IMG/VR virus record: IMGVR_UViG_3300023083_000001
Span: 1-64,000 of that record
Direction: 5' to 3' (one strand)
Length of the DNA: 64,000 bases
The notes beneath the pieces are model-generated. The model made no database searches, was not told where the DNA came from, and worked only from the letters and a program-made list of their open reading frames with translations. The first letter of the stretch is position 1. Every line of letters begins with the position of its first letter. A program made the translations under genes and the position numbers. Of the stretch, positions 26,472-39,972 are shown one piece after another.

Positions 26472-27836
26472 ATGGATTTCGTTAACTGGCTTAAAGATCA
26501 ATACGGTGTACTCAACGCAATGTCGCCGATTGCTGGTGGTGTGGTACTTGCGAGTTTGATGGGTCTGATCTACGCGACTTTGCGTGGATTGCCAAAGGTT
26601 ATCTATACGGCAACCTTGAATCAGTGCATTACCAGCCTCACGTTCACCAACGCTGGGGCATGGACTGAAGAGCGTGTGGGTTTCACCTCCTTCATGGGTT
26701 GGTTTATTTCCAACAAGTGGTCAAGGCATTCCAGAAACATCAGCATGGTTACGGTCGGCGATAACGTCGTCTTTGGTCCTGGGAATGGCCGCCACTTCTT
26801 CTTCTACAAAGGTAAGCTCTTCTGGTTCAATAAAGAAGCGCTTGCCAGCAGCGGTACGCATGTCGAGAAAGAACGCATCACTATCGTGACCTTTGGCCGT
26901 GATCAGGAAAAGCTCAAAGAGATCGTGAAGTCGTTCATGCCCAAACCTGAAGACGGTAAGCCTCGGGTCTATACGTTCACTCACGACAACAATTGGCAGT
27001 ATCTGTGCACTATCCCACGTCGTGACTTGTCTACAGTGGTGATCGACAAGGAAACCAAAGCTCATCTGGTCAAGAAGCTCGAGGAGTTCGCTGCTAGCGA
27101 AGAATGGTTTAAATCCAAAGGCTTAGCCTGGAAGTTGACCGTGATCCTGCACGGTGTTCCAGGTACCGGGAAGACCAGCCTAGTCAAGGCACTTGCTAGT
27201 CACTACGGGAAGAACATTGCCTCGCTCAATATCTCTGGCGTGTCTGACGCTCAGTTTGAGAAAGCGGTGAGTAGTCTGCCGGAGAATACGTGGTTGTTGG
27301 TTGAAGACTTCGACAGCGCCAATGCAGTCAAGTCTCGTGGCCTGAGCCGTAAAGCACCTGCGCCAACACCCGGAAAAGAAATTGTAGCACCGGCAAGTGA
27401 CGGCATCAAACCAGCAGCACCCGTTAAGAAAATGGATGCGGTGGATAGTCTGATCGAGGAGTTCACTCGTCTGTCTCTGACCAAGGTGCTCAATACGCTG
27501 GATGGCATTGTGAGTCTGGATAATTCGGTGATCTGGCTGACCACTAACGCTCTGGACCGTATCGATGAAGCAGTGACTCGTAAGGGTCGAGTGGACCACA
27601 TCTGGGAGATCAAACTCCTGGAAGACCCTGAAGTGCGCGAATACATCAACATGGTGTTCCCTGATCACGAGATCAAGAACCCAGGCAAGTTCTCTCAAAT
27701 CGCAGGCTGTGACTTACAGGCATTGTTCCTGGAAGAGCGATTTGACTCGGCAGCATTTGAACAATCGATTCCGAAAGAGTTCAGAGCGCCGTTTGTCCAC
27801 TCGGTCAACAGTAACACGCATTTGTACCAATCCTAG
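26472..27836 (+). CDS. BCS1-like membrane-anchored AAA ATPase
   Basis: N-terminal TM, BCS1_N-like FGPGNGRHFFFYKGKLFW..ERITIVTFGRD; GVPGTGKTS, LLVEDFD, LNTLDG, RKGRVD. Confidence 0.85.
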   Translation: MDFVNWLKDQYGVLNAMSPIAGGVVLASLMGLIYATLRGLPKVIYTATLNQCITSLTFTNAGAWTEERVGFTSFMGWFISNKWSRHSRNISMVTVGDNVVFGPGNGRHFFFYKGKLFWFNKEALASSGTHVEKERITIVTFGRDQEKLKEIVKSFMPKPEDGKPRVYTFTHDNNWQYLCTIPRRDLSTVVIDKETKAHLVKKLEEFAASEEWFKSKGLAWKLTVILHGVPGTGKTSLVKALASHYGKNIASLNISGVSDAQFEKAVSSLPENTWLLVEDFDSANAVKSRGLSRKAPAPTPGKEIVAPASDGIKPAAPVKKMDAVDSLIEEFTRLSLTKVLNTLDGIVSLDNSVIWLTTNALDRIDEAVTRKGRVDHIWEIKLLEDPEVREYINMVFPDHEIKNPGKFSQIAGCDLQALFLEERFDSAAFEQSIPKEFRAPFVHSVNSNTHLYQS

Positions 27837-32800: not shown

Positions 32801-33161
32801 ACGGACATCCTTGAGTTCTGTAATCTACATACTATTCAGAATTCAAGTATATCTACCCACCTGCAAGTCTCCTTGCAGAACAGACTACATCATCACCGAC
32901 TCCTGTCGGTGCTACGCGCTTCCCACCACTTGGCGGTACTCTACTCATCACCTATGTCATCATCCATGTAGGTGCTTTCGATAGTCGTTGAACCCGATTC
33001 GTGATACGTTAGACGTACTTTAGAACCTCGGCTGCTGATTGTCCTGTAATGATAGATTTTCAAGCATTCACGCTCACCGTTTCCAGTCACGTTGTAGCTC
33101 TATCACCTTTAGGAGTTTCCAGCAATTCGCGTAGTTTATTAACGTAACCTCATTGATGTTT
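32302..33161 (-). mobile_element. group I intron (IA2-like), 860 nt, in nrdJ
   Basis: P1 GUAACCUU/GAGGUUAC with U-G at the splice site; P AAUUGCUGGAA, Q AAUCAGCAG, R UUCAACGACUA, S GAUGUAGUC; P3 CUACGCG/CGCGUAG; terminal G; removal restores FCNL|TETN in frame. Confidence 0.93.
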
Positions 33162-34220
33162 AAGGTTACAGAATTGAAAGCCTGAACGACCGTCTTCGGT
33201 GTAAGCCCGCAGACCGATCTCGACACACGGGTTGTAACCCTGCTCGCTGTCTTCTGCGAAGATGAAGCCAGGCTCGCCGAATTCACGAACGGACTTCATG
33301 ATGGTTGCCCACTCAGAACGACCCAGCTCACTGCGGATCAGCAGTGCAGAGTTGTTAGAACGACCACGTTGCGGGTTGGTGGTGTACCAATCGCCTGTCT
33401 TGGCGGTGAGCATTTCTTTGTCATCTTTGGAGAAGATGCAGATCGTTGCAGCGCGCCGTATACCGCCTGACAGAACAGCGTCAGCCATGTGCATGACGAA
33501 GTCGTACGCGTGGATCGGTTTGAGCTGCAATTCAAGGTCTGGGTGTGCGATGCCATCAAGTAGTTCGCGACACTTCTCCAGAGAGCGTTGCAGGCCGTCA
33601 GGACCCGGTGCTTTAAAGCCGCCGGAGATCAATGCGCCGCGTGGACGGACTTCGGAGTAATCGAAGTGCACCTGAGTGTTCTTGTACTCAGGGAACGTAC
33701 CGCCGTCAACGAAGTAGCTGGATAGCAGAACGCCGAATGCGTCAGACCAACCTTCAATGCTGTCCGGCACGACGAAGACTTTGGCTTTGTCTTTACCAGG
33801 TGCAGTGACTTTCGGCAACTTGGCGATGTGGTGCTTTTGTACGGAGAACCCAACACCGCAGCCTGCCAGCAACAGATACATGGCGTGTTGGAAGAACTCG
33901 GTACGGTCGCAGTAGCTGAACGAGCAGTTGTACATACGCGCTTCGTGCTGGAAGATCTGAGGACCACCAAACTGCAAAGCACGCTGGGAGCCAAGTACGG
34001 CTTTATCTTTGTAAGCCAATTCAGCGAAGGCAATTGCCTCTTCCAACTCAGGTGACATTACCGCTGCATACTTCTCGCGGTGCATGTCCATCACACGCTC
34101 TACCGCCTCATCCCACGTCTCATACCGCCCAAGCTTCTCGGAGAACCGAGAATAACCCATGAAAAACTTGGAATCAGCCAACATGTCTTTGGCTAGGCTA
34201 GGTTGGAAGTTAGAATTCAT
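33162..34220 (-). CDS. nrdJ: class II ribonucleotide reductase, exon 1
   Basis: GGAG RBS before ATG 34220; YSR...ETWDEAVERV, MYNCS, GCGVGFS, GGIRRAA, GEPG, NPCVEI (thiyl Cys), FCNL. Confidence 0.9.
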
Positions 34221-34751
34221 TAACAGCTCCGTTGTGTTTTCGTATGACAAATTCTGGAGGATTTACGGTCCCTATATCGCTAGTGACCAGGGTTAAAATC
34301 TACTCTTATTTTTCGTCTTGGACATATACTAAGGTCTGATTTTTCGATTGACTTAATGGTATTAAAACTTAACGTTCAAGCGCTATATATTGACCCCGCA
34401 AACCCTTACTTTGGAGCGTTATCATGAGCAAACAACCGACCTACAGTTCAATCCCAGACCCAAGGGATTTTACACCCAATCAACCAGCAGTTATCCTCCA
34501 ACCGGTTGACGTCAGTGCGATCTGCAATTTCGCAGAGATCTACCCTACCGGAGCCAGCGAAGAAGTTAAGTTCATCGCTAACACTAATCATGTCATCGAT
34601 CTGGCTAGAACGGCCGGGTGGGGTGAGATTACCTTGATAGGTAAACAGATCCTGCTGGTAGCTAAACTCTCCCTGGACGATCCCGGCGTGCCTGCAAAAG
34701 CTGACGAGTAAGCTCCAGATCGTATAACCTACCTTACTGCGGTTATACGTC

Positions 34752-36574: not shown

Positions 36575-36588
36575 ATACCCGTGGCACG

Positions 36589-36610
36589 TTACCTCCCTTC
36601 GGGGAGGTAG
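36589..36610 (+). terminator. UUCG-capped hairpin (terminator or processing/stabilising stem)
   Basis: TTACCTCCC-TTCG-GGGAGGTAG. Confidence 0.6.
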
Positions 36611-36622
36611 CACTTATTATAT

Positions 36623-36726
36623 ACCGAATGCGCTCGAAAGAGCCAGCCAGTAAGGGTGGGTCAGTTCCGCCTCGCTGACCGAGGGTAGGTGCGAAAGGAG
36701 TGGGGTTCAATTCCCCATGATTCAGT
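36623..36726 (+). ncRNA. tRNA-like RNA 2 (degenerate acceptor stem)
   Basis: T arm TGGGG-TTCAATT-CCCCA; GCTC-GAAA-GAGC in D position; GGTCAG/CTGACC internal stem. Confidence 0.5.
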
Positions 36727-36827
36727 CTTAGGGACAATAATCCTTAAGTAACTCTGGTGAGACAAATGGTCCGGGCGACACGCCCGTTAAACGCACCGGC
36801 GGAATCCGGTCGAAGTGTAAAGTTTCT

Positions 36828-36912
36828 GGAGAGGTTCCCGAGCGGTCAAAGGGGGCAGACTGTAAATCTGCTGTCGCGTACTTCGAAGGTTCGAATCCTT
36901 CTCTCTCCACCA
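36828..36912 (+). tRNA. tRNA-Tyr (GTA)
   Basis: GGAGAGG/TCTCTCC acceptor, GCAGA-CTGTAAA-TCTGC anticodon arm, long V arm, GAAGG-TTCGAAT-CCTTC, encoded ACCA. Confidence 0.97.
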
Positions 36913-37015: not shown

Positions 37016-37101
37016 GGATCGATAGGGAAGTGGCTTAACCCAACGGCCTGCAAAGCCGTCTTCGAAAGATACCGTCAGTTCAAATCTGACTCGATCCTCC
37101 A
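37016..37101 (+). tRNA. tRNA-Cys (GCA) with long variable region
   Basis: GGATCGA/TCGATCC acceptor, U73, CCA; ACGGC-CTGCAAA-GCCGT; GTCAG-TTCAAAT-CTGAC. Confidence 0.92.
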
Positions 37102-37504: not shown

Positions 37505-37852
37505 ATGAAAGCATTAGTAGTCGCAGTCCTGTTATTGATCTCAGGTTACGTTCACGCTGAAACCGAGAAGATCATGAAGTACACTAACAAAGATTGTGAA
37601 CGCCTACGTTCCAATCTTCAAATCATCGCGGACAAGCAACAGAAGGGCGTTGACTTCAACGTCGCCATTGCAAGCCTGTACCGACCTTCAGTCTTAAGTG
37701 ACTTTACCTACAGGGCGTCTCTGTGGATGCTGGTCTTTTCCTCTAACAAGTTTTACGAAGTCCCTAACATGGATCAGAGTATGTATATTGGTAAAATATA
37801 CACTACGTGTATGGGAAAAGTCGGAACCGGTTATTGGACCTATTACGAATAA
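37505..37852 (+). CDS. secreted two-cysteine protein, paralog A
   Basis: Signal peptide (VHA|E); T..DC ... G V ... YR..L ... Y.TCM. Confidence 0.7.
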   Translation: MKALVVAVLLLISGYVHAETEKIMKYTNKDCERLRSNLQIIADKQQKGVDFNVAIASLYRPSVLSDFTYRASLWMLVFSSNKFYEVPNMDQSMYIGKIYTTCMGKVGTGYWTYYE

Positions 37853-39972
37853 AGGGGTTTGTAGCAATGCTTAATCATTTCAAAGGGCTGACGTTCGAGA
37901 ACAAATACTTCGCTATGCGCCCGTTGCTTGTCCATGCAATTCATGCGCTGTCTGACTTACCGCTGTTGTCGTTTACGTTGATAGACGATACGGGAGATTC
38001 ATCTAAGGTCTACTACGACCTGGATTTCATAGATTACAATCCAGAGCACCACGTTCCCAGTCACCTGGCGCACTCCCTTGCCAACAGGGTCTGTAGCGCT
38101 ATGATGCAAGAGGGTGTTCGCTTCGATGGTGAAGAGGAACGTTGGCACGGTAGTCCTGGCGACTATTTGGCGTCGGTGATCAGGGGAACAATCAACCGTA
38201 AGTATCCTAACGGCAGCTCAGTCATCCGCGAGGACATCATGACTGTCAGACTGCCGCAAGGGGCCGTGCTCCTTGTACTCGACAAAGACCACGAACGGTT
38301 GGACAGTACCAAACCACACAACCGTGAAGACCTTCTTCACACACTCATGCTTGGGAAGGTCAACTTCTTCGGTATTGACAAGGTCTGGATGTTTCACCAA
38401 CCACATGTGAAGTTCACGGAAATCAGCATTCCGTCACCGAACATCCTGTTGAACGAGATCATCGATATTGTCTTCCAAACATTCCCCTTCCTTAAAGGAC
38501 ATGTGGTGTTTGGTCCTGAGATCAGTTACATCACTGACAAGCCTTAAGGAGCTGTAGTCGATGGAAATCAATAACGATGTAAACGCAGTCATCATCGATT
38601 TGAAGCTGTACAACGAACTGCTGCGAATGGCAGACTTCGCTATCAGTGAAGTACGGTCTAACGAAACAATCGTAAGGCGTATCAACAAACATGTCTGTCG
38701 TTTTAACCCGTACATTGCCGAGGCTCAGAAGGTAGGCCGGGAAGTGATCGCATTGTCGACAAAGACCATGCGCGATAAGTTGAAGAGCTTATACAGAACC
38801 GGCGGTAAGCAGGTCTACTACCGCGAAGATAAAGACGTGTACTGGCCTGTCACGCTGGGTAAACAAATGAAGTACGATTGGACGATGGTGCGGATGAAGT
38901 CCGCTACTGAACATCGTAAGTTCTCGTCGTACGAAATCTGGCAGCATCTGAATAGCTTTGTGGTCGAGGGTGACGTTCGACTGTGTCCTAACCCAAACGT
39001 TCCTGGTTCGTTCATGAGAGCCTTGACCGAAGCTGAACGTAACGCTGAGTGGGAAAGGAACCAACCACCTGTTGTCAAAAAATCAAAACCTTACAACTTG
39101 AAAGTTATCATCACCGGCGATTCACTTACGGTGCATAAAGAAAGATCTGACGGTGAGGTGGTCGTAGAGCCTGACGATCAAGAAGAACCGAAACTGTATC
39201 TTGCGAAAATCAGATCGTTAATGAACGATTGTGTGGACGAACACCTCATTGCAGATCTTTATCGGATTGCCGATGATACCTTCGGCGGTGATCGCTACTT
39301 CGGCCAATTGCTTGTGGAGCAAAAGTGATGTTTCCGTTAAAGGACATGGTTCCAAAGAAGTACAGTCCGGTGATCGTTTACTTCAACGCCAGTTCGGTGG
39401 AAGAACTTGAAGCACAGCGTACCGCAGTACATGAGTCGATGGTTGCTAACGGTTATCACTTGCAAGCGTTCTCAAGTCATAGTTCTGTTAGTGTGGAGGT
39501 TGCATATCTCTCTACACCGATGAAGCAGTTGGCTGATGCAGAGTTCTTGCATTCAGATCGCAATTCGGCAGGACATCTTTTCCATGACAAGAAAACATTG
39601 GAACTTCCGCTCGACCACGGATTGAATGGTACCTGGCCGTTTTCTGAGGCTGATACCAATGACCTTGATCATAATTCGATGGTCGTATCCCGCTCCAATG
39701 GTGAGGTGTTGGTATATTGGAAAGAGTGGCGACTCACTCACATGCAAGCTAGACTGATAACTATCAGTCTAGCTGAGAAGGAATTTCCAATGGTCCGTAT
39801 TGTCATCGATGCGGAAGGGAAGTTTCGAATTGACCTCGATCAGTCCTTCCCTAAAGGACTGAAACTAACTGTTACTTACTAGCTAAGTGCCATTATGTGC
39901 CGAGGATATGATAGGACCCGGAGCACACCCCCTAATTCCAGCTACATCCCACGAATGAAAGGATATCGAGTC

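What the first reader, a model, noticed from the sequence alone, without database searches (positions are those of the whole stretch)
37016..37101. tRNA-Cys(GCA) with a class II-sized variable arm
Seen: an 86-nt tRNA with GCA anticodon and U73 (Cys identity elements) but 14 nt (CTTCGAAAGATACC) between the anticodon and T stems, able to form a small hairpin. Known: bacterial tRNA-Cys normally has a 4-5-nt variable loop; long arms characterise Ser, Leu, Tyr and Sec tRNAs and are recognised by SerRS. Inference: either a nuclease-resistant or anticodon-switched tRNA, or one that could be charged with another amino acid and misread Cys codons.
Basis: partly seen in the sequence, partly recalled or inferred. 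Interest (0 to 1): 0.6.

Follow-up and report, generated by a model that had tools for sequence, protein, structure and literature searches.

The report
Phage cysteine tRNA with extra arm
A 258-kb phage from leaf litter carries an intact cysteine tRNA with a 14-base variable region; this layout recurs in many phages and a few bacteria, so it is most likely an ordinary cysteine decoder, and the purpose of the extra arm is untested.

Summary
Window 37016-37101 (+) is an intact 86-nt tRNA(GCA) with U73, an encoded CCA and a 14-nt variable region, CUUCGAAAGAUACC. ARAGORN calls it, and Rfam scores it 56.6 bits.

It is not unique. About 14% of tRNA-Cys genes in a sample of IMG/VR viral contigs have variable regions of 11-21 nt. 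So do the isolated phages Pseudomonas D6 and RVTF4 (both distant kin of this phage), Escherichia EcS1, Xanthomonas XacN1 and Xoo-sp13, and Brevundimonas Kabachok. Three genomes of one Actinomycetes order carry a 12-nt version, and in the two contigs examined the neighbouring genes are ordinary bacterial ones.

In these relatives the arm is a covarying 3-bp helix capped by a tetraloop. The window copy is the weakest example, with 2 Watson-Crick pairs and a U·U around GAAA.

The body is cysteine-type. Its nearest neighbours are canonical tRNA-Cys, and it has U73, GCA, G15:C48 and A13·A22. It is therefore not an anticodon-switched Ser, Leu or Tyr tRNA, and mischarging is unlikely.

The phage has only two tRNAs, Tyr and Cys, and no CysRS. 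Cys makes up 0.86% of its codons. A role in protecting the phage from tRNA-cutting host defences is plausible but untested.

I found no paper describing such arms on phage tRNA-Cys.

The parts
37016..37101 (+). tRNA-Cys(GCA), 86 nt including the encoded CCA. Acceptor 37016-37022 / 37091-37097; D arm 37025-37041; anticodon arm 37043-37059; T arm 37074-37090.
   Evidence: ARAGORN; Rfam RF00005 56.6 bits; unconstrained cloverleaf fold
37050..37052 (+). Anticodon GCA, in the loop C32 U33 G C A A37 A38.
   Evidence: Sequence; ARAGORN places the anticodon at position 35
37060..37073 (+). Variable region CUUCGAAAGAUACC (14 nt): 1-nt spacer, UUC / GAAA tetraloop / GAU (C:G, U:A, U·U), then ACC ending in C48.
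   Evidence: Sequence. The same layout forms a covarying 3-bp helix in 15 relatives; the window copy is the only unpaired cell
37098..37101 (+). Discriminator U73 followed by the encoded CCA.
   Evidence: Sequence. U73 occurs in 32 of 33 long-arm and 86 of 87 canonical phage tRNA(GCA)
36828..36912 (+). tRNA-Tyr(GTA), 85 nt. It is the only other tRNA in the 258-kb genome and lies 103 nt upstream.
   Evidence: ARAGORN on the whole genome; Rfam 53.5 bits
36630..36822 (+). Conserved structured element directly upstream of tRNA-Tyr. It is a candidate non-coding RNA of tRNA operons and is not part of the tRNA-Cys.
   Evidence: 83% identical to Pseudomonas phage D6, where it follows tRNA-Leu, with compensatory changes in three hairpins. 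No Rfam, tRNA or tmRNA call
36588..36611 (+). Terminator-like hairpin (10 pairs, UUCG loop) ahead of the RNA gene block.

Best explanation
This is a working phage tRNA-Cys that reads UGU and UGC. It is most likely charged with cysteine by the host CysRS, since the phage encodes none.

Its variable loop has been expanded by a small GAAA-capped hairpin. Phage tRNA-Cys genes have gained or lost this expansion repeatedly, and one bacterial lineage carries it too.

Inference: the arm is tolerated for two reasons. First, tRNA-Cys already has the class II-type core, a 3-bp D stem with a purine13·A22 mismatch and G15:C48. Second, CysRS recognises the discriminator and the anticodon, not the variable face.

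Inference: the phage's only two tRNAs, Tyr and Cys, act as insurance against host nucleases that deplete single tRNA species, and the altered variable region may help the phage copy escape recognition. Shown here: the gene, its intact fold, its Cys-type body and identity elements, the recurrence of the layout, and covariation of the arm in relatives. Not shown: charging, expression, and any resistance to a nuclease.
For: - Intact tRNA.
- Cys-type body and elements. U73 and GCA are the major CysRS determinants (PMC9976931).
- No phage CysRS.
- Recurrence: 33 unique tRNA(GCA) genes with variable regions of 11-21 nt, 31 from viral-contig loci or isolated phages and 2 not (the window's own tRNA and the bacterial L146); 32 of the 33 have U73. 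This is about 11 of roughly 80 tRNA-Cys in one database sample.
- Isolated phages D6, RVTF4, EcS1, XacN1, Xoo-sp13 and Kabachok carry one. In D6, RVTF4, XacN1 and EcS1 it is the only tRNA(GCA) match.
- The arm covaries: 3 of 3 pairs show changes on both sides, and 47 of 48 cells are paired.
- Cellular precedent: the 82-nt form was seen next to ordinary bacterial genes in two contigs, the Actinomycetes genome contig L146 and the metagenome contig L398. In a sample of that order, three genomes including the one holding L146 have the 12-nt region while 20 relatives have 6 nt.
- The class II-like D arm is the rule for tRNA-Cys, 106 of 120.
- Demand does not explain the gene: Cys is 0.86% of codons.
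- Defence precedent: PtuAB of Retron-Eco7 and Septu cut the tRNA-Tyr variable loop, and phage tRNA-Tyr counters this (PMC11555353, PMC12673091, PMC13096335). VapC4 targets tRNA-Cys(GCA) and VapC52 cuts a variable loop (PMC13273310).
Against: - No aminoacylation, expression or cleavage data exist. The only runs that hold the stretch are DNA contigs.
- The window's arm is the weakest of the family (U·U, no predicted stability), so here it may be decaying or neutral.
- No close relative of this phage was found to show whether this exact arm is conserved.
- The host is unknown, so no defence system can be named.
- Mukai et al. (PMC5389517) argue that a long arm with G73 or U73 can suit SerRS, so serylation is not formally excluded.
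Confidence: 0.7

Rival explanations
1. The arm is a neutral insertion. The tRNA is a normal Cys decoder and the extra hairpin does nothing; it persists because that face of tRNA-Cys is unconstrained.
For: The window copy has a U·U mismatch and no predicted stability. Variable lengths of 4, 5, 6, 7 and 11-21 nt all occur. Bacterial relatives differ only by a 6-nt versus 12-nt loop.
Against: In relatives the helix is kept by compensatory changes, 47 of 48 cells paired. The state was gained or lost at least 8 times on the tree. Arm-bearing versions of other class I tRNAs are enriched in the same contigs, 11.1% versus 3.4%. It was not found in the checked loci of 401 Gammaproteobacteria. All of this points to selection in phages.
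Confidence: 0.3
2. The tRNA is mischarged. The long arm recruits SerRS (or TyrRS or LeuRS), so Cys codons are partly read as another amino acid.
For: Long arms are SerRS determinants, and Mukai et al. accept U73 as compatible with serylation for allo-tRNAs (PMC5389517). Some long-arm tRNA(GCA) genes in other contigs have Ser-like D arms and anticodon stems.
Against: This copy has U73 and GCA, a Cys-type body and at most 3 weak pairs in the arm. From my own knowledge, tRNA-Ser arms have 5-7 pairs, and converting tRNA-Tyr to Ser identity required lengthening the arm. A73, needed by Tyr and Leu, is absent. In four isolated phages the long-arm gene is the only tRNA(GCA) match, and it was the only credible tRNA(GCA) match in the one bacterial genome checked; both fit a faithful decoder.
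Confidence: 0.05
3. It is an anticodon-switched class II tRNA: a Tyr (GUA) or Ser (GCU) tRNA that became GCA by one base change and then acquired U73.
For: GUA to GCA and GCU to GCA are single changes. tRNA-Tyr sits 103 nt away. Ser and Tyr tRNAs appear among the top 30 neighbours at 69-72% identity.
Against: The best neighbours are canonical tRNA-Cys at up to 79%. The anticodon and T arms are identical to those of the 78-nt tRNA-Cys in L012 and L025. From reading the two sequences side by side, I see little similarity to the adjacent tRNA-Tyr; I did not align them.
Confidence: 0.05
4. It has a non-translational role. A Tyr-sized variable arm on a tRNA-Cys body acts as a decoy or inhibitor for variable-loop-cutting nucleases such as PtuAB, or as another regulatory RNA.
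For: The arm layout (1 + 3 bp + loop + 3 bp + 3 nt) has the size I recall for bacterial tRNA-Tyr arms. The gene is paired with tRNA-Tyr as the phage's only tRNAs. Over-expressed tRNA-Tyr neutralises PtuAB (PMC12673091).
Against: There is no direct evidence. All translation-related features are intact (U33, A37, T loop, CCA). Other phages keep the long-arm gene inside full tRNA sets.
Confidence: 0.07

Closest known systems
Canonical bacterial and phage tRNA-Cys(GCA) (class I, 4-6-nt variable loop)
   Same: U73, GCA, G15:C48, a 3-bp D stem with purine13·A22, a 7/5 acceptor/T branch and an encoded CCA. The anticodon and T arms are identical to the 78-nt phage tRNA-Cys in L012 and L025.
   Different: The variable region is 14 nt instead of 4-6 nt.
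Long-arm tRNA-Cys of isolated phages (Pseudomonas D6 and RVTF4, Escherichia EcS1, Xanthomonas XacN1 and Xoo-sp13, Brevundimonas Kabachok). D6, EcS1, XacN1 and Kabachok are annotated plainly as tRNA-Cys; RVTF4 and Xoo-sp13 are unannotated. I found no discussion of the arm.
   Same: 7/5 cloverleaf, U73-CCA, GCA, and a 15-17-nt variable region built as spacer + 3-4 bp + tetraloop + spacer. D6 also shares the D-loop pattern AAGTGGYNNAA and the upstream conserved RNA element.
   Different: Their arms are fully paired, whereas the window copy has U·U. Overall sequence identity is too low for BLAST to find them.
selC* tRNA-Cys (Mukai et al. 2017, PMC5389517)
   Same: A long variable arm together with U73 and a GCA anticodon. 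That paper showed cysteinylation of selC* tRNAs in vitro (D. tiedjei, by its CysRS) and in vivo (D. biacutus UCA form, by an engineered CysRS variant); some species need a dedicated CysRS*.
   Different: selC* is tRNA-Sec-like, with longer acceptor and anticodon stems, an 8/4 branch in certain delta-proteobacteria, linkage to selB*/cysS*, and a home in anaerobic bacteria. The window tRNA is 7/5 with a 5-bp anticodon stem and a normal D arm, and it sits in a phage with no CysRS.
allo-tRNAs and nematode nev-tRNAs (class II bodies with non-Ser/Leu anticodons; PMC5389517, PMC3333845)
   Same: A variable arm on a tRNA whose anticodon belongs to a class I amino acid.
   Different: In those tRNAs the body and identity follow Ser or Leu, so they can mistranslate. 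Here the body and discriminator follow the anticodon (Cys).
Phage tRNA-Tyr that escapes PtuAB (Retron-Eco7, Septu) through a distinct variable loop (PMC11555353, PMC12673091, PMC13096335)
   Same: A phage-encoded tRNA whose variable region differs from the host's. The window phage also carries a tRNA-Tyr next to the tRNA-Cys.
   Different: That mechanism has been shown only for tRNA-Tyr. I found no report of a defence nuclease acting on the tRNA-Cys variable region.

Membership tests
tRNA (Rfam RF00005) | Cloverleaf scoring above the family's gathering score | tested here: met
   56.6 bits against 29, E = 1.5e-9; ARAGORN call
tRNA-Cys | GCA anticodon and U73 discriminator (the major CysRS determinants, PMC9976931) | tested here: met
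   37050-37052 GCA; T at 37098
tRNA-Cys | Body resembles other tRNA-Cys once the anticodon is masked | tested here: met
   19 of the 30 nearest among 1252 phage tRNAs are Cys, the best at 79%. Part of the pool was fetched by similarity to this tRNA, which biases the top hits.
tRNA-Cys | Core typical of tRNA-Cys: G15 with its position-48 partner, and a 3-bp D stem with a 13·22 mismatch | tested here: met
   G15:C48 and A13·A22. The pool has 106 of 120 with a 3-bp D stem and mostly G15:C48. E. coli's G15:G48 variant is not present.
tRNA-Cys | Aminoacylated with cysteine by CysRS | not testable with these tools
   Needs an in vitro or in vivo charging assay.
Class II tRNA (structural class) | Variable region longer than 10 nt | tested here: met
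   14 nt
Class II tRNA (structural class) | Variable region forms a stable stem-loop of at least 3 bp | tested here: inconclusive
   2 Watson-Crick pairs plus U·U around GAAA; absent from the centroid fold. The homologous helix covaries in relatives.
selC* tRNA-Cys / tRNA-Sec-like | 8/4 (or 8/5, 9/4) acceptor/T branch with extended anticodon and D stems | tested here: not met
   7/5 branch, 5-bp anticodon stem, 3-bp D stem with an 11-nt loop. An eighth acceptor pair would be U8·C.
allo-tRNA | 12-bp acceptor branch in an 8/4 or 9/3 layout with a Ser-type body | tested here: not met
   7/5 branch and a Cys-type body
Nuclease-evading phage tRNA | Resists a host tRNA nuclease that cleaves the host isoacceptor | not testable with these tools
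   Host and defence system are unknown. There is only literature precedent, for tRNA-Tyr and tRNA-Lys.

The most novel reading that the evidence does not exclude
Gaining a variable arm is a convergent, adaptive trait of phage tRNAs. Small tetraloop-capped arms added to class I isotypes (Cys above all, but also Asn, Met, Thr, Lys, Pro, Val, Gly, Trp and His) would let phage tRNAs escape, or act as decoys for, host nucleases that recognise tRNA cores or variable loops. On this reading the Tyr + Cys pair in this phage is a minimal anti-defence tRNA cassette rather than a codon-supply device.
Probability: 0.2. Interest if true: 0.8.

Novelty: new variant of a known kind. Interest (0 to 1): 0.45.

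Why it matters
As a single gene it is modest: a cysteine tRNA that most likely works normally. The context it exposed is more useful.

- Roughly one in seven phage tRNA-Cys genes in the sample carries a class II-like arm.
- The arm has been gained or lost repeatedly.
- Arm-bearing versions of other class I tRNAs are enriched in the same phage contigs.
- It was not found in the checked loci of 401 Gammaproteobacteria.
- I found no paper that describes it. The XacN1 genome paper calls these genes canonical.

Variable-loop-cutting defence nucleases (PtuAB in Septu and Retron-Eco7) have only recently been described. That gives a testable link between tRNA architecture and the contest between phages and host defences, and cultured systems are available for the test: D6 on P. 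syringae DC3000 and EcS1 on E. coli. It also shows that CysRS systems tolerate a variable arm, which is relevant to tRNA engineering.

Tried and rejected
- Close relatives of this phage: the search for related loci with two window proteins (37807-38547 and 26472-27836) found none in viral contigs. I could not test whether this exact arm is conserved in near kin.
- BLAST of the 86-nt tRNA against 50,697 phage records at E <= 1: no match. Relatives came from pattern scans and from an upstream conserved element instead.
- A specific pattern (CTGCAAAGCCGT, gap 8-20, GTTCAAATC) in viral contigs returned only normal-size tRNA-Cys. The same idea in metagenome contigs returned the phage's own contig plus a bacterial 82-nt family.
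It is not a usable rate.
- In the 401 Gammaproteobacteria, matches ran near the reversed-pattern control, and 33 fetched bacterial loci (31 of them from these 401 genomes) held no tRNA(GCA). The other 73 matches were not fetched.
- The EcS1 long-arm tRNA-Cys against 5,426 complete E. coli genomes: no match.
- Sequencing runs: only DNA contigs hold the stretch, so there is nothing on expression. The second leaf-litter sample does not cover the tRNA-Cys.
- Pfam and PHROGs on ten neighbouring ORFs: nothing informative, and no RlmN-like methyltransferase such as the one next to the D6 and RVTF4 tRNA clusters.
- selC*, allo-tRNA and tRNA-Sec readings were rejected on the 7/5 architecture.
- Codon-supply explanation judged weak: Cys is 0.86% of codons, but the host's codon usage is unknown.
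- A tree of 120 tRNA(GCA) cores has only 69 columns and is poorly resolved. I use it only to say that the long-arm genes do not form one clade.

Full report
**What is there.** The window is the first 64 kb of a complete 258,357-bp viral record with direct terminal repeats. The same contig appears in a metagenome collection as Ga0247734_1000011, and the only sequencing runs holding most of the stretch are leaf-litter metagenomes.

An AAA-type ATPase at 26472-27836 finds phiKZ-like jumbo phages (Noxifer, PhiPA3, SL2, Munch) at about 40% identity. The phage is therefore a distant member of that broad group. No close relative turned up in viral contigs.

The whole genome has exactly two tRNA genes. 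These are tRNA-Tyr(GTA) at 36828-36912 and tRNA-Cys(GCA) at 37016-37101, both on the + strand and both with an encoded CCA.

**Checking the observation.** ARAGORN and Rfam both call the tRNA-Cys (56.6 bits against a gathering score of 29). Every stem is fully paired, and the conserved bases are all present: U8, A14, G18 G19, U33, the T loop TTCAAAT and C61. An unconstrained fold gives the cloverleaf.

Its pairing is weak: C:G and U:A around a GAAA tetraloop, with U·U as a third 'pair'. It appears in the minimum-energy fold but not in the centroid, and the 14-mer alone does not fold.

**It is a cysteine tRNA, not a converted class II tRNA.** It has U73 and GCA, the two major CysRS determinants (PMC9976931). 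It also has G15:C48 and a 3-bp D stem with A13·A22.

Of the tRNA(GCA) genes in that pool, 106 of 120 have this same 3-bp D stem with a purine13·A22 mismatch, the pattern also seen in tRNA-Leu (98 of 108). Most other class I isotypes have 4-bp D stems.

With the anticodon masked and the variable region removed, 19 of the 30 nearest neighbours are tRNA-Cys. The best, at 79%, is a 78-nt tRNA-Cys (L012) whose anticodon and T arms are identical to the window's and whose variable loop is AAAGCC. Part of that pool was fetched by similarity to this tRNA, which favours those top hits. Several other neighbours, however, came from a generic pattern.

**The layout is recurrent.** About 27 of these are real tRNA(GCA) genes of 81-93 nt.

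Re-running with gap 12-30 scanned the same front part of the database. It gave 69 tRNA(GCA) genes with variable loops of 3-7 nt in 86 new loci, against about 11 long ones. That is roughly 14% of tRNA-Cys genes matching these loop motifs. This figure comes from one prefix of one database, not from a census.

Across everything fetched there are 33 unique long-arm tRNA(GCA) genes with variable regions of 11-21 nt, and 32 of them have U73. Thirty-one come from viral-contig loci or isolated phages; the other two are the window's own tRNA and the bacterial L146.

Isolated phages carry them too:
- Pseudomonas D6, 87 nt, annotated tRNA-Cys
- Pseudomonas RVTF4, 88 nt
- Escherichia EcS1, a T4-like phage, 87 nt
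- Xanthomonas XacN1 and Xoo-sp13, 89 nt
- Brevundimonas Kabachok and four kin; Kabachok's is 87 nt, and the four kin gave the same partial match under a tRNA-Cys annotation but were not fetched

D6 and RVTF4 share the ATPase at 33-34% identity, so they are distant relatives of the window phage. D6 also shares the conserved RNA element upstream of the tRNAs. In D6, RVTF4, XacN1 and EcS1 the long-arm gene is the only tRNA(GCA) match.

**The arm is a real helix in the family.** Most long-arm copies share one layout: 1-2 nt, a stem of 3-5 bp, a tetraloop (often GAAA), then 3-4 nt (often CAUC) ending in C48.

I aligned 16 copies that share this layout. All three arm pairs show changes on both sides, and 47 of 48 cells are paired, as good as the four standard helices. 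The one unpaired cell is the window tRNA's U·U. I chose those 16 because they aligned cleanly, which favours pairing, but the variety of pair types (GC, AU, UA, CG) does not depend on that choice.

**Repeated gain, and a wider phage trait.** On a tree of the 120 tRNA(GCA) cores the long-arm state is scattered. It needs 27 changes, against a shuffled mean of 29.3, and supported branches force at least 8. The tree rests on only 69 columns, so I conclude only that the long-arm genes do not form one clade.

Other class I isotypes with arms occur in the same material: Asn, Ile(UAU), Met, Lys, Thr, Pro, Val, Gly, Trp and His. Most keep the discriminator expected for their isotype. They are enriched in loci that also have a long-arm Cys, 11.1% against 3.4% of tRNAs; per locus, 11 of 23 against 16 of 73.

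**Bacteria.** In 401 sampled Gammaproteobacteria the long-gap pattern matched at about the rate of its reversed control, and 33 fetched bacterial loci (31 of them from these 401 genomes) held no tRNA(GCA).

An exception turned up in the metagenome and genome scans. It is an 82-nt tRNA-Cys with variable region UGCGAAAGCUUC. In the two contigs whose neighbours I scanned (L146, from an Actinomycetes genome, and the metagenome contig L398), the flanking genes are plainly bacterial: CoA transferase, xanthine dehydrogenase, a polyketide synthase and VanY. In a sample of 151 genomes of that Actinomycetes order, 20 have the 6-nt loop and three, including the genome that holds L146, have the 12-nt loop. 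In the one genome checked it was the only credible tRNA(GCA) match. A cell can evidently live with an arm-bearing tRNA-Cys, which argues that CysRS accepts it.

**Function.** The phage has no CysRS and no CCA-adding enzyme. Cys is 0.86% of its codons, so demand for Cys decoding is a weak reason to carry the gene.

Recent work shows that PtuAB nucleases of Retron-Eco7 and Septu cut tRNA-Tyr in its variable loop. Phage tRNA-Tyr counters them, in one case through a distinct variable loop (PMC11555353, PMC12673091, PMC13096335). VapC4 targets tRNA-Cys(GCA), and VapC52 cuts a tRNA-Ser variable loop and some phage tRNAs (PMC13273310).

A two-gene Tyr + Cys set fits an insurance role against such nucleases, and a changed variable region is a plausible route to escape. 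This is inference. Nothing here tests it, and the host is unknown.

**Mischarging.** The arm is shorter and weaker than the tRNA-Ser arms I know of. A73, needed by TyrRS and LeuRS, is absent, and both CysRS determinants are present. Mukai et al. note that a long arm with U73 can suit SerRS in allo-tRNAs, so I keep this rival at about 5% rather than zero.

**Literature.** Nine full-text searches found no description of arm-bearing tRNA-Cys in phages. The XacN1 genome paper counts its tRNAs as canonical. The closest described class is selC* tRNA-Cys. It shares the long arm, U73 and GCA, but it is Sec-like (8/4 in some lineages) and lives in bacteria. The window tRNA fails that architecture test.

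**Verdict.** The reading that the tRNA is an oddity or a mistranslator is not supported. It is a member of an under-described but common class of phage tRNA-Cys, and it has the weakest arm of the 16 aligned copies. What the arm does remains open.

Noticed in passing
window 36630-36822 (+): A conserved structured element lies directly upstream of tRNA-Tyr. It is 83% identical to Pseudomonas phage D6, where it follows tRNA-Leu, with compensatory changes in three hairpins, one of them T-arm-like. It also matches P. putida phages Holyagarpour and Ebordelon and Salmonella phage SA002. In one public run a related contig at depth about 149 is flanked by tRNA ends. Rfam, tRNA and tmRNA searches find nothing. 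It is a candidate new non-coding RNA of phage tRNA operons.
   Followed up: partly
window 36828-36912 (+): tRNA-Tyr(GTA) is the only other tRNA in the genome. Its variable region is UGUCGCGUACUUC. Defence nucleases PtuAB (Septu, Retron-Eco7) cut tRNA-Tyr in the variable loop, so this gene may be a counter-defence. Environmental tRNA-Tyr contigs differ from it by insertions and deletions at 36874-36879, inside this loop.
   Followed up: partly
window 32861-33171 (-): A group I intron (Rfam 73.7 bits) adjoins and slightly overlaps the 3' end of an ORF (33150-34250) that matches ribonucleotide reductase, so it probably interrupts that gene.
   Followed up: no
L264:2988-3074 (Xoo-sp13), L271:2247-2335 (XacN1), L272:2662-2748 (Kabachok): Isolated phages carry 87-89-nt tRNA-Asn(GTT) and tRNA-Met(CAT) genes with well-paired variable arms. 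The Xoo-sp13 Asn gene has U73 rather than the usual G73.
   Followed up: partly
L293:7917-8001 (-): A tRNA-Asn(GTT) in an unrelated viral contig has the variable region UUCGAAAGACACC, almost the same string as the window's tRNA-Cys (CUUCGAAAGAUACC) and with the same mismatched outer pair. This hints at a sequence-specific motif or an exchange of arms between tRNAs.
   Followed up: no
L119 463-547 and 553-625; L074 3611-3685 and 5467-5552; L093 5-79 and 220-306: Three viral contigs carry both a canonical tRNA-Cys (73-75 nt) and a long-arm one (85-87 nt). In L119 the two are adjacent; in L074 and L093 they lie in the same locus. This suggests the two forms are not redundant.
   Followed up: no
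L015, L108, L123, L280, L300, L309, L315, L351 and others: tRNA-Ile(UAU) genes of 88-95 nt with variable regions of 21-27 nt and A73 are frequent in viral contigs, 10 of 65 Ile genes. They may correspond to the UAU allo-tRNA-like class of Mukai et al..
   Followed up: no
L266 3138-3193 (D6), L267 2725-3618 (RVTF4): In both Pseudomonas jumbo phages an RlmN-like RNA methyltransferase gene lies just downstream of the Ser-Cys-Thr tRNA cluster. No counterpart was found near the window's tRNAs.
   Followed up: partly
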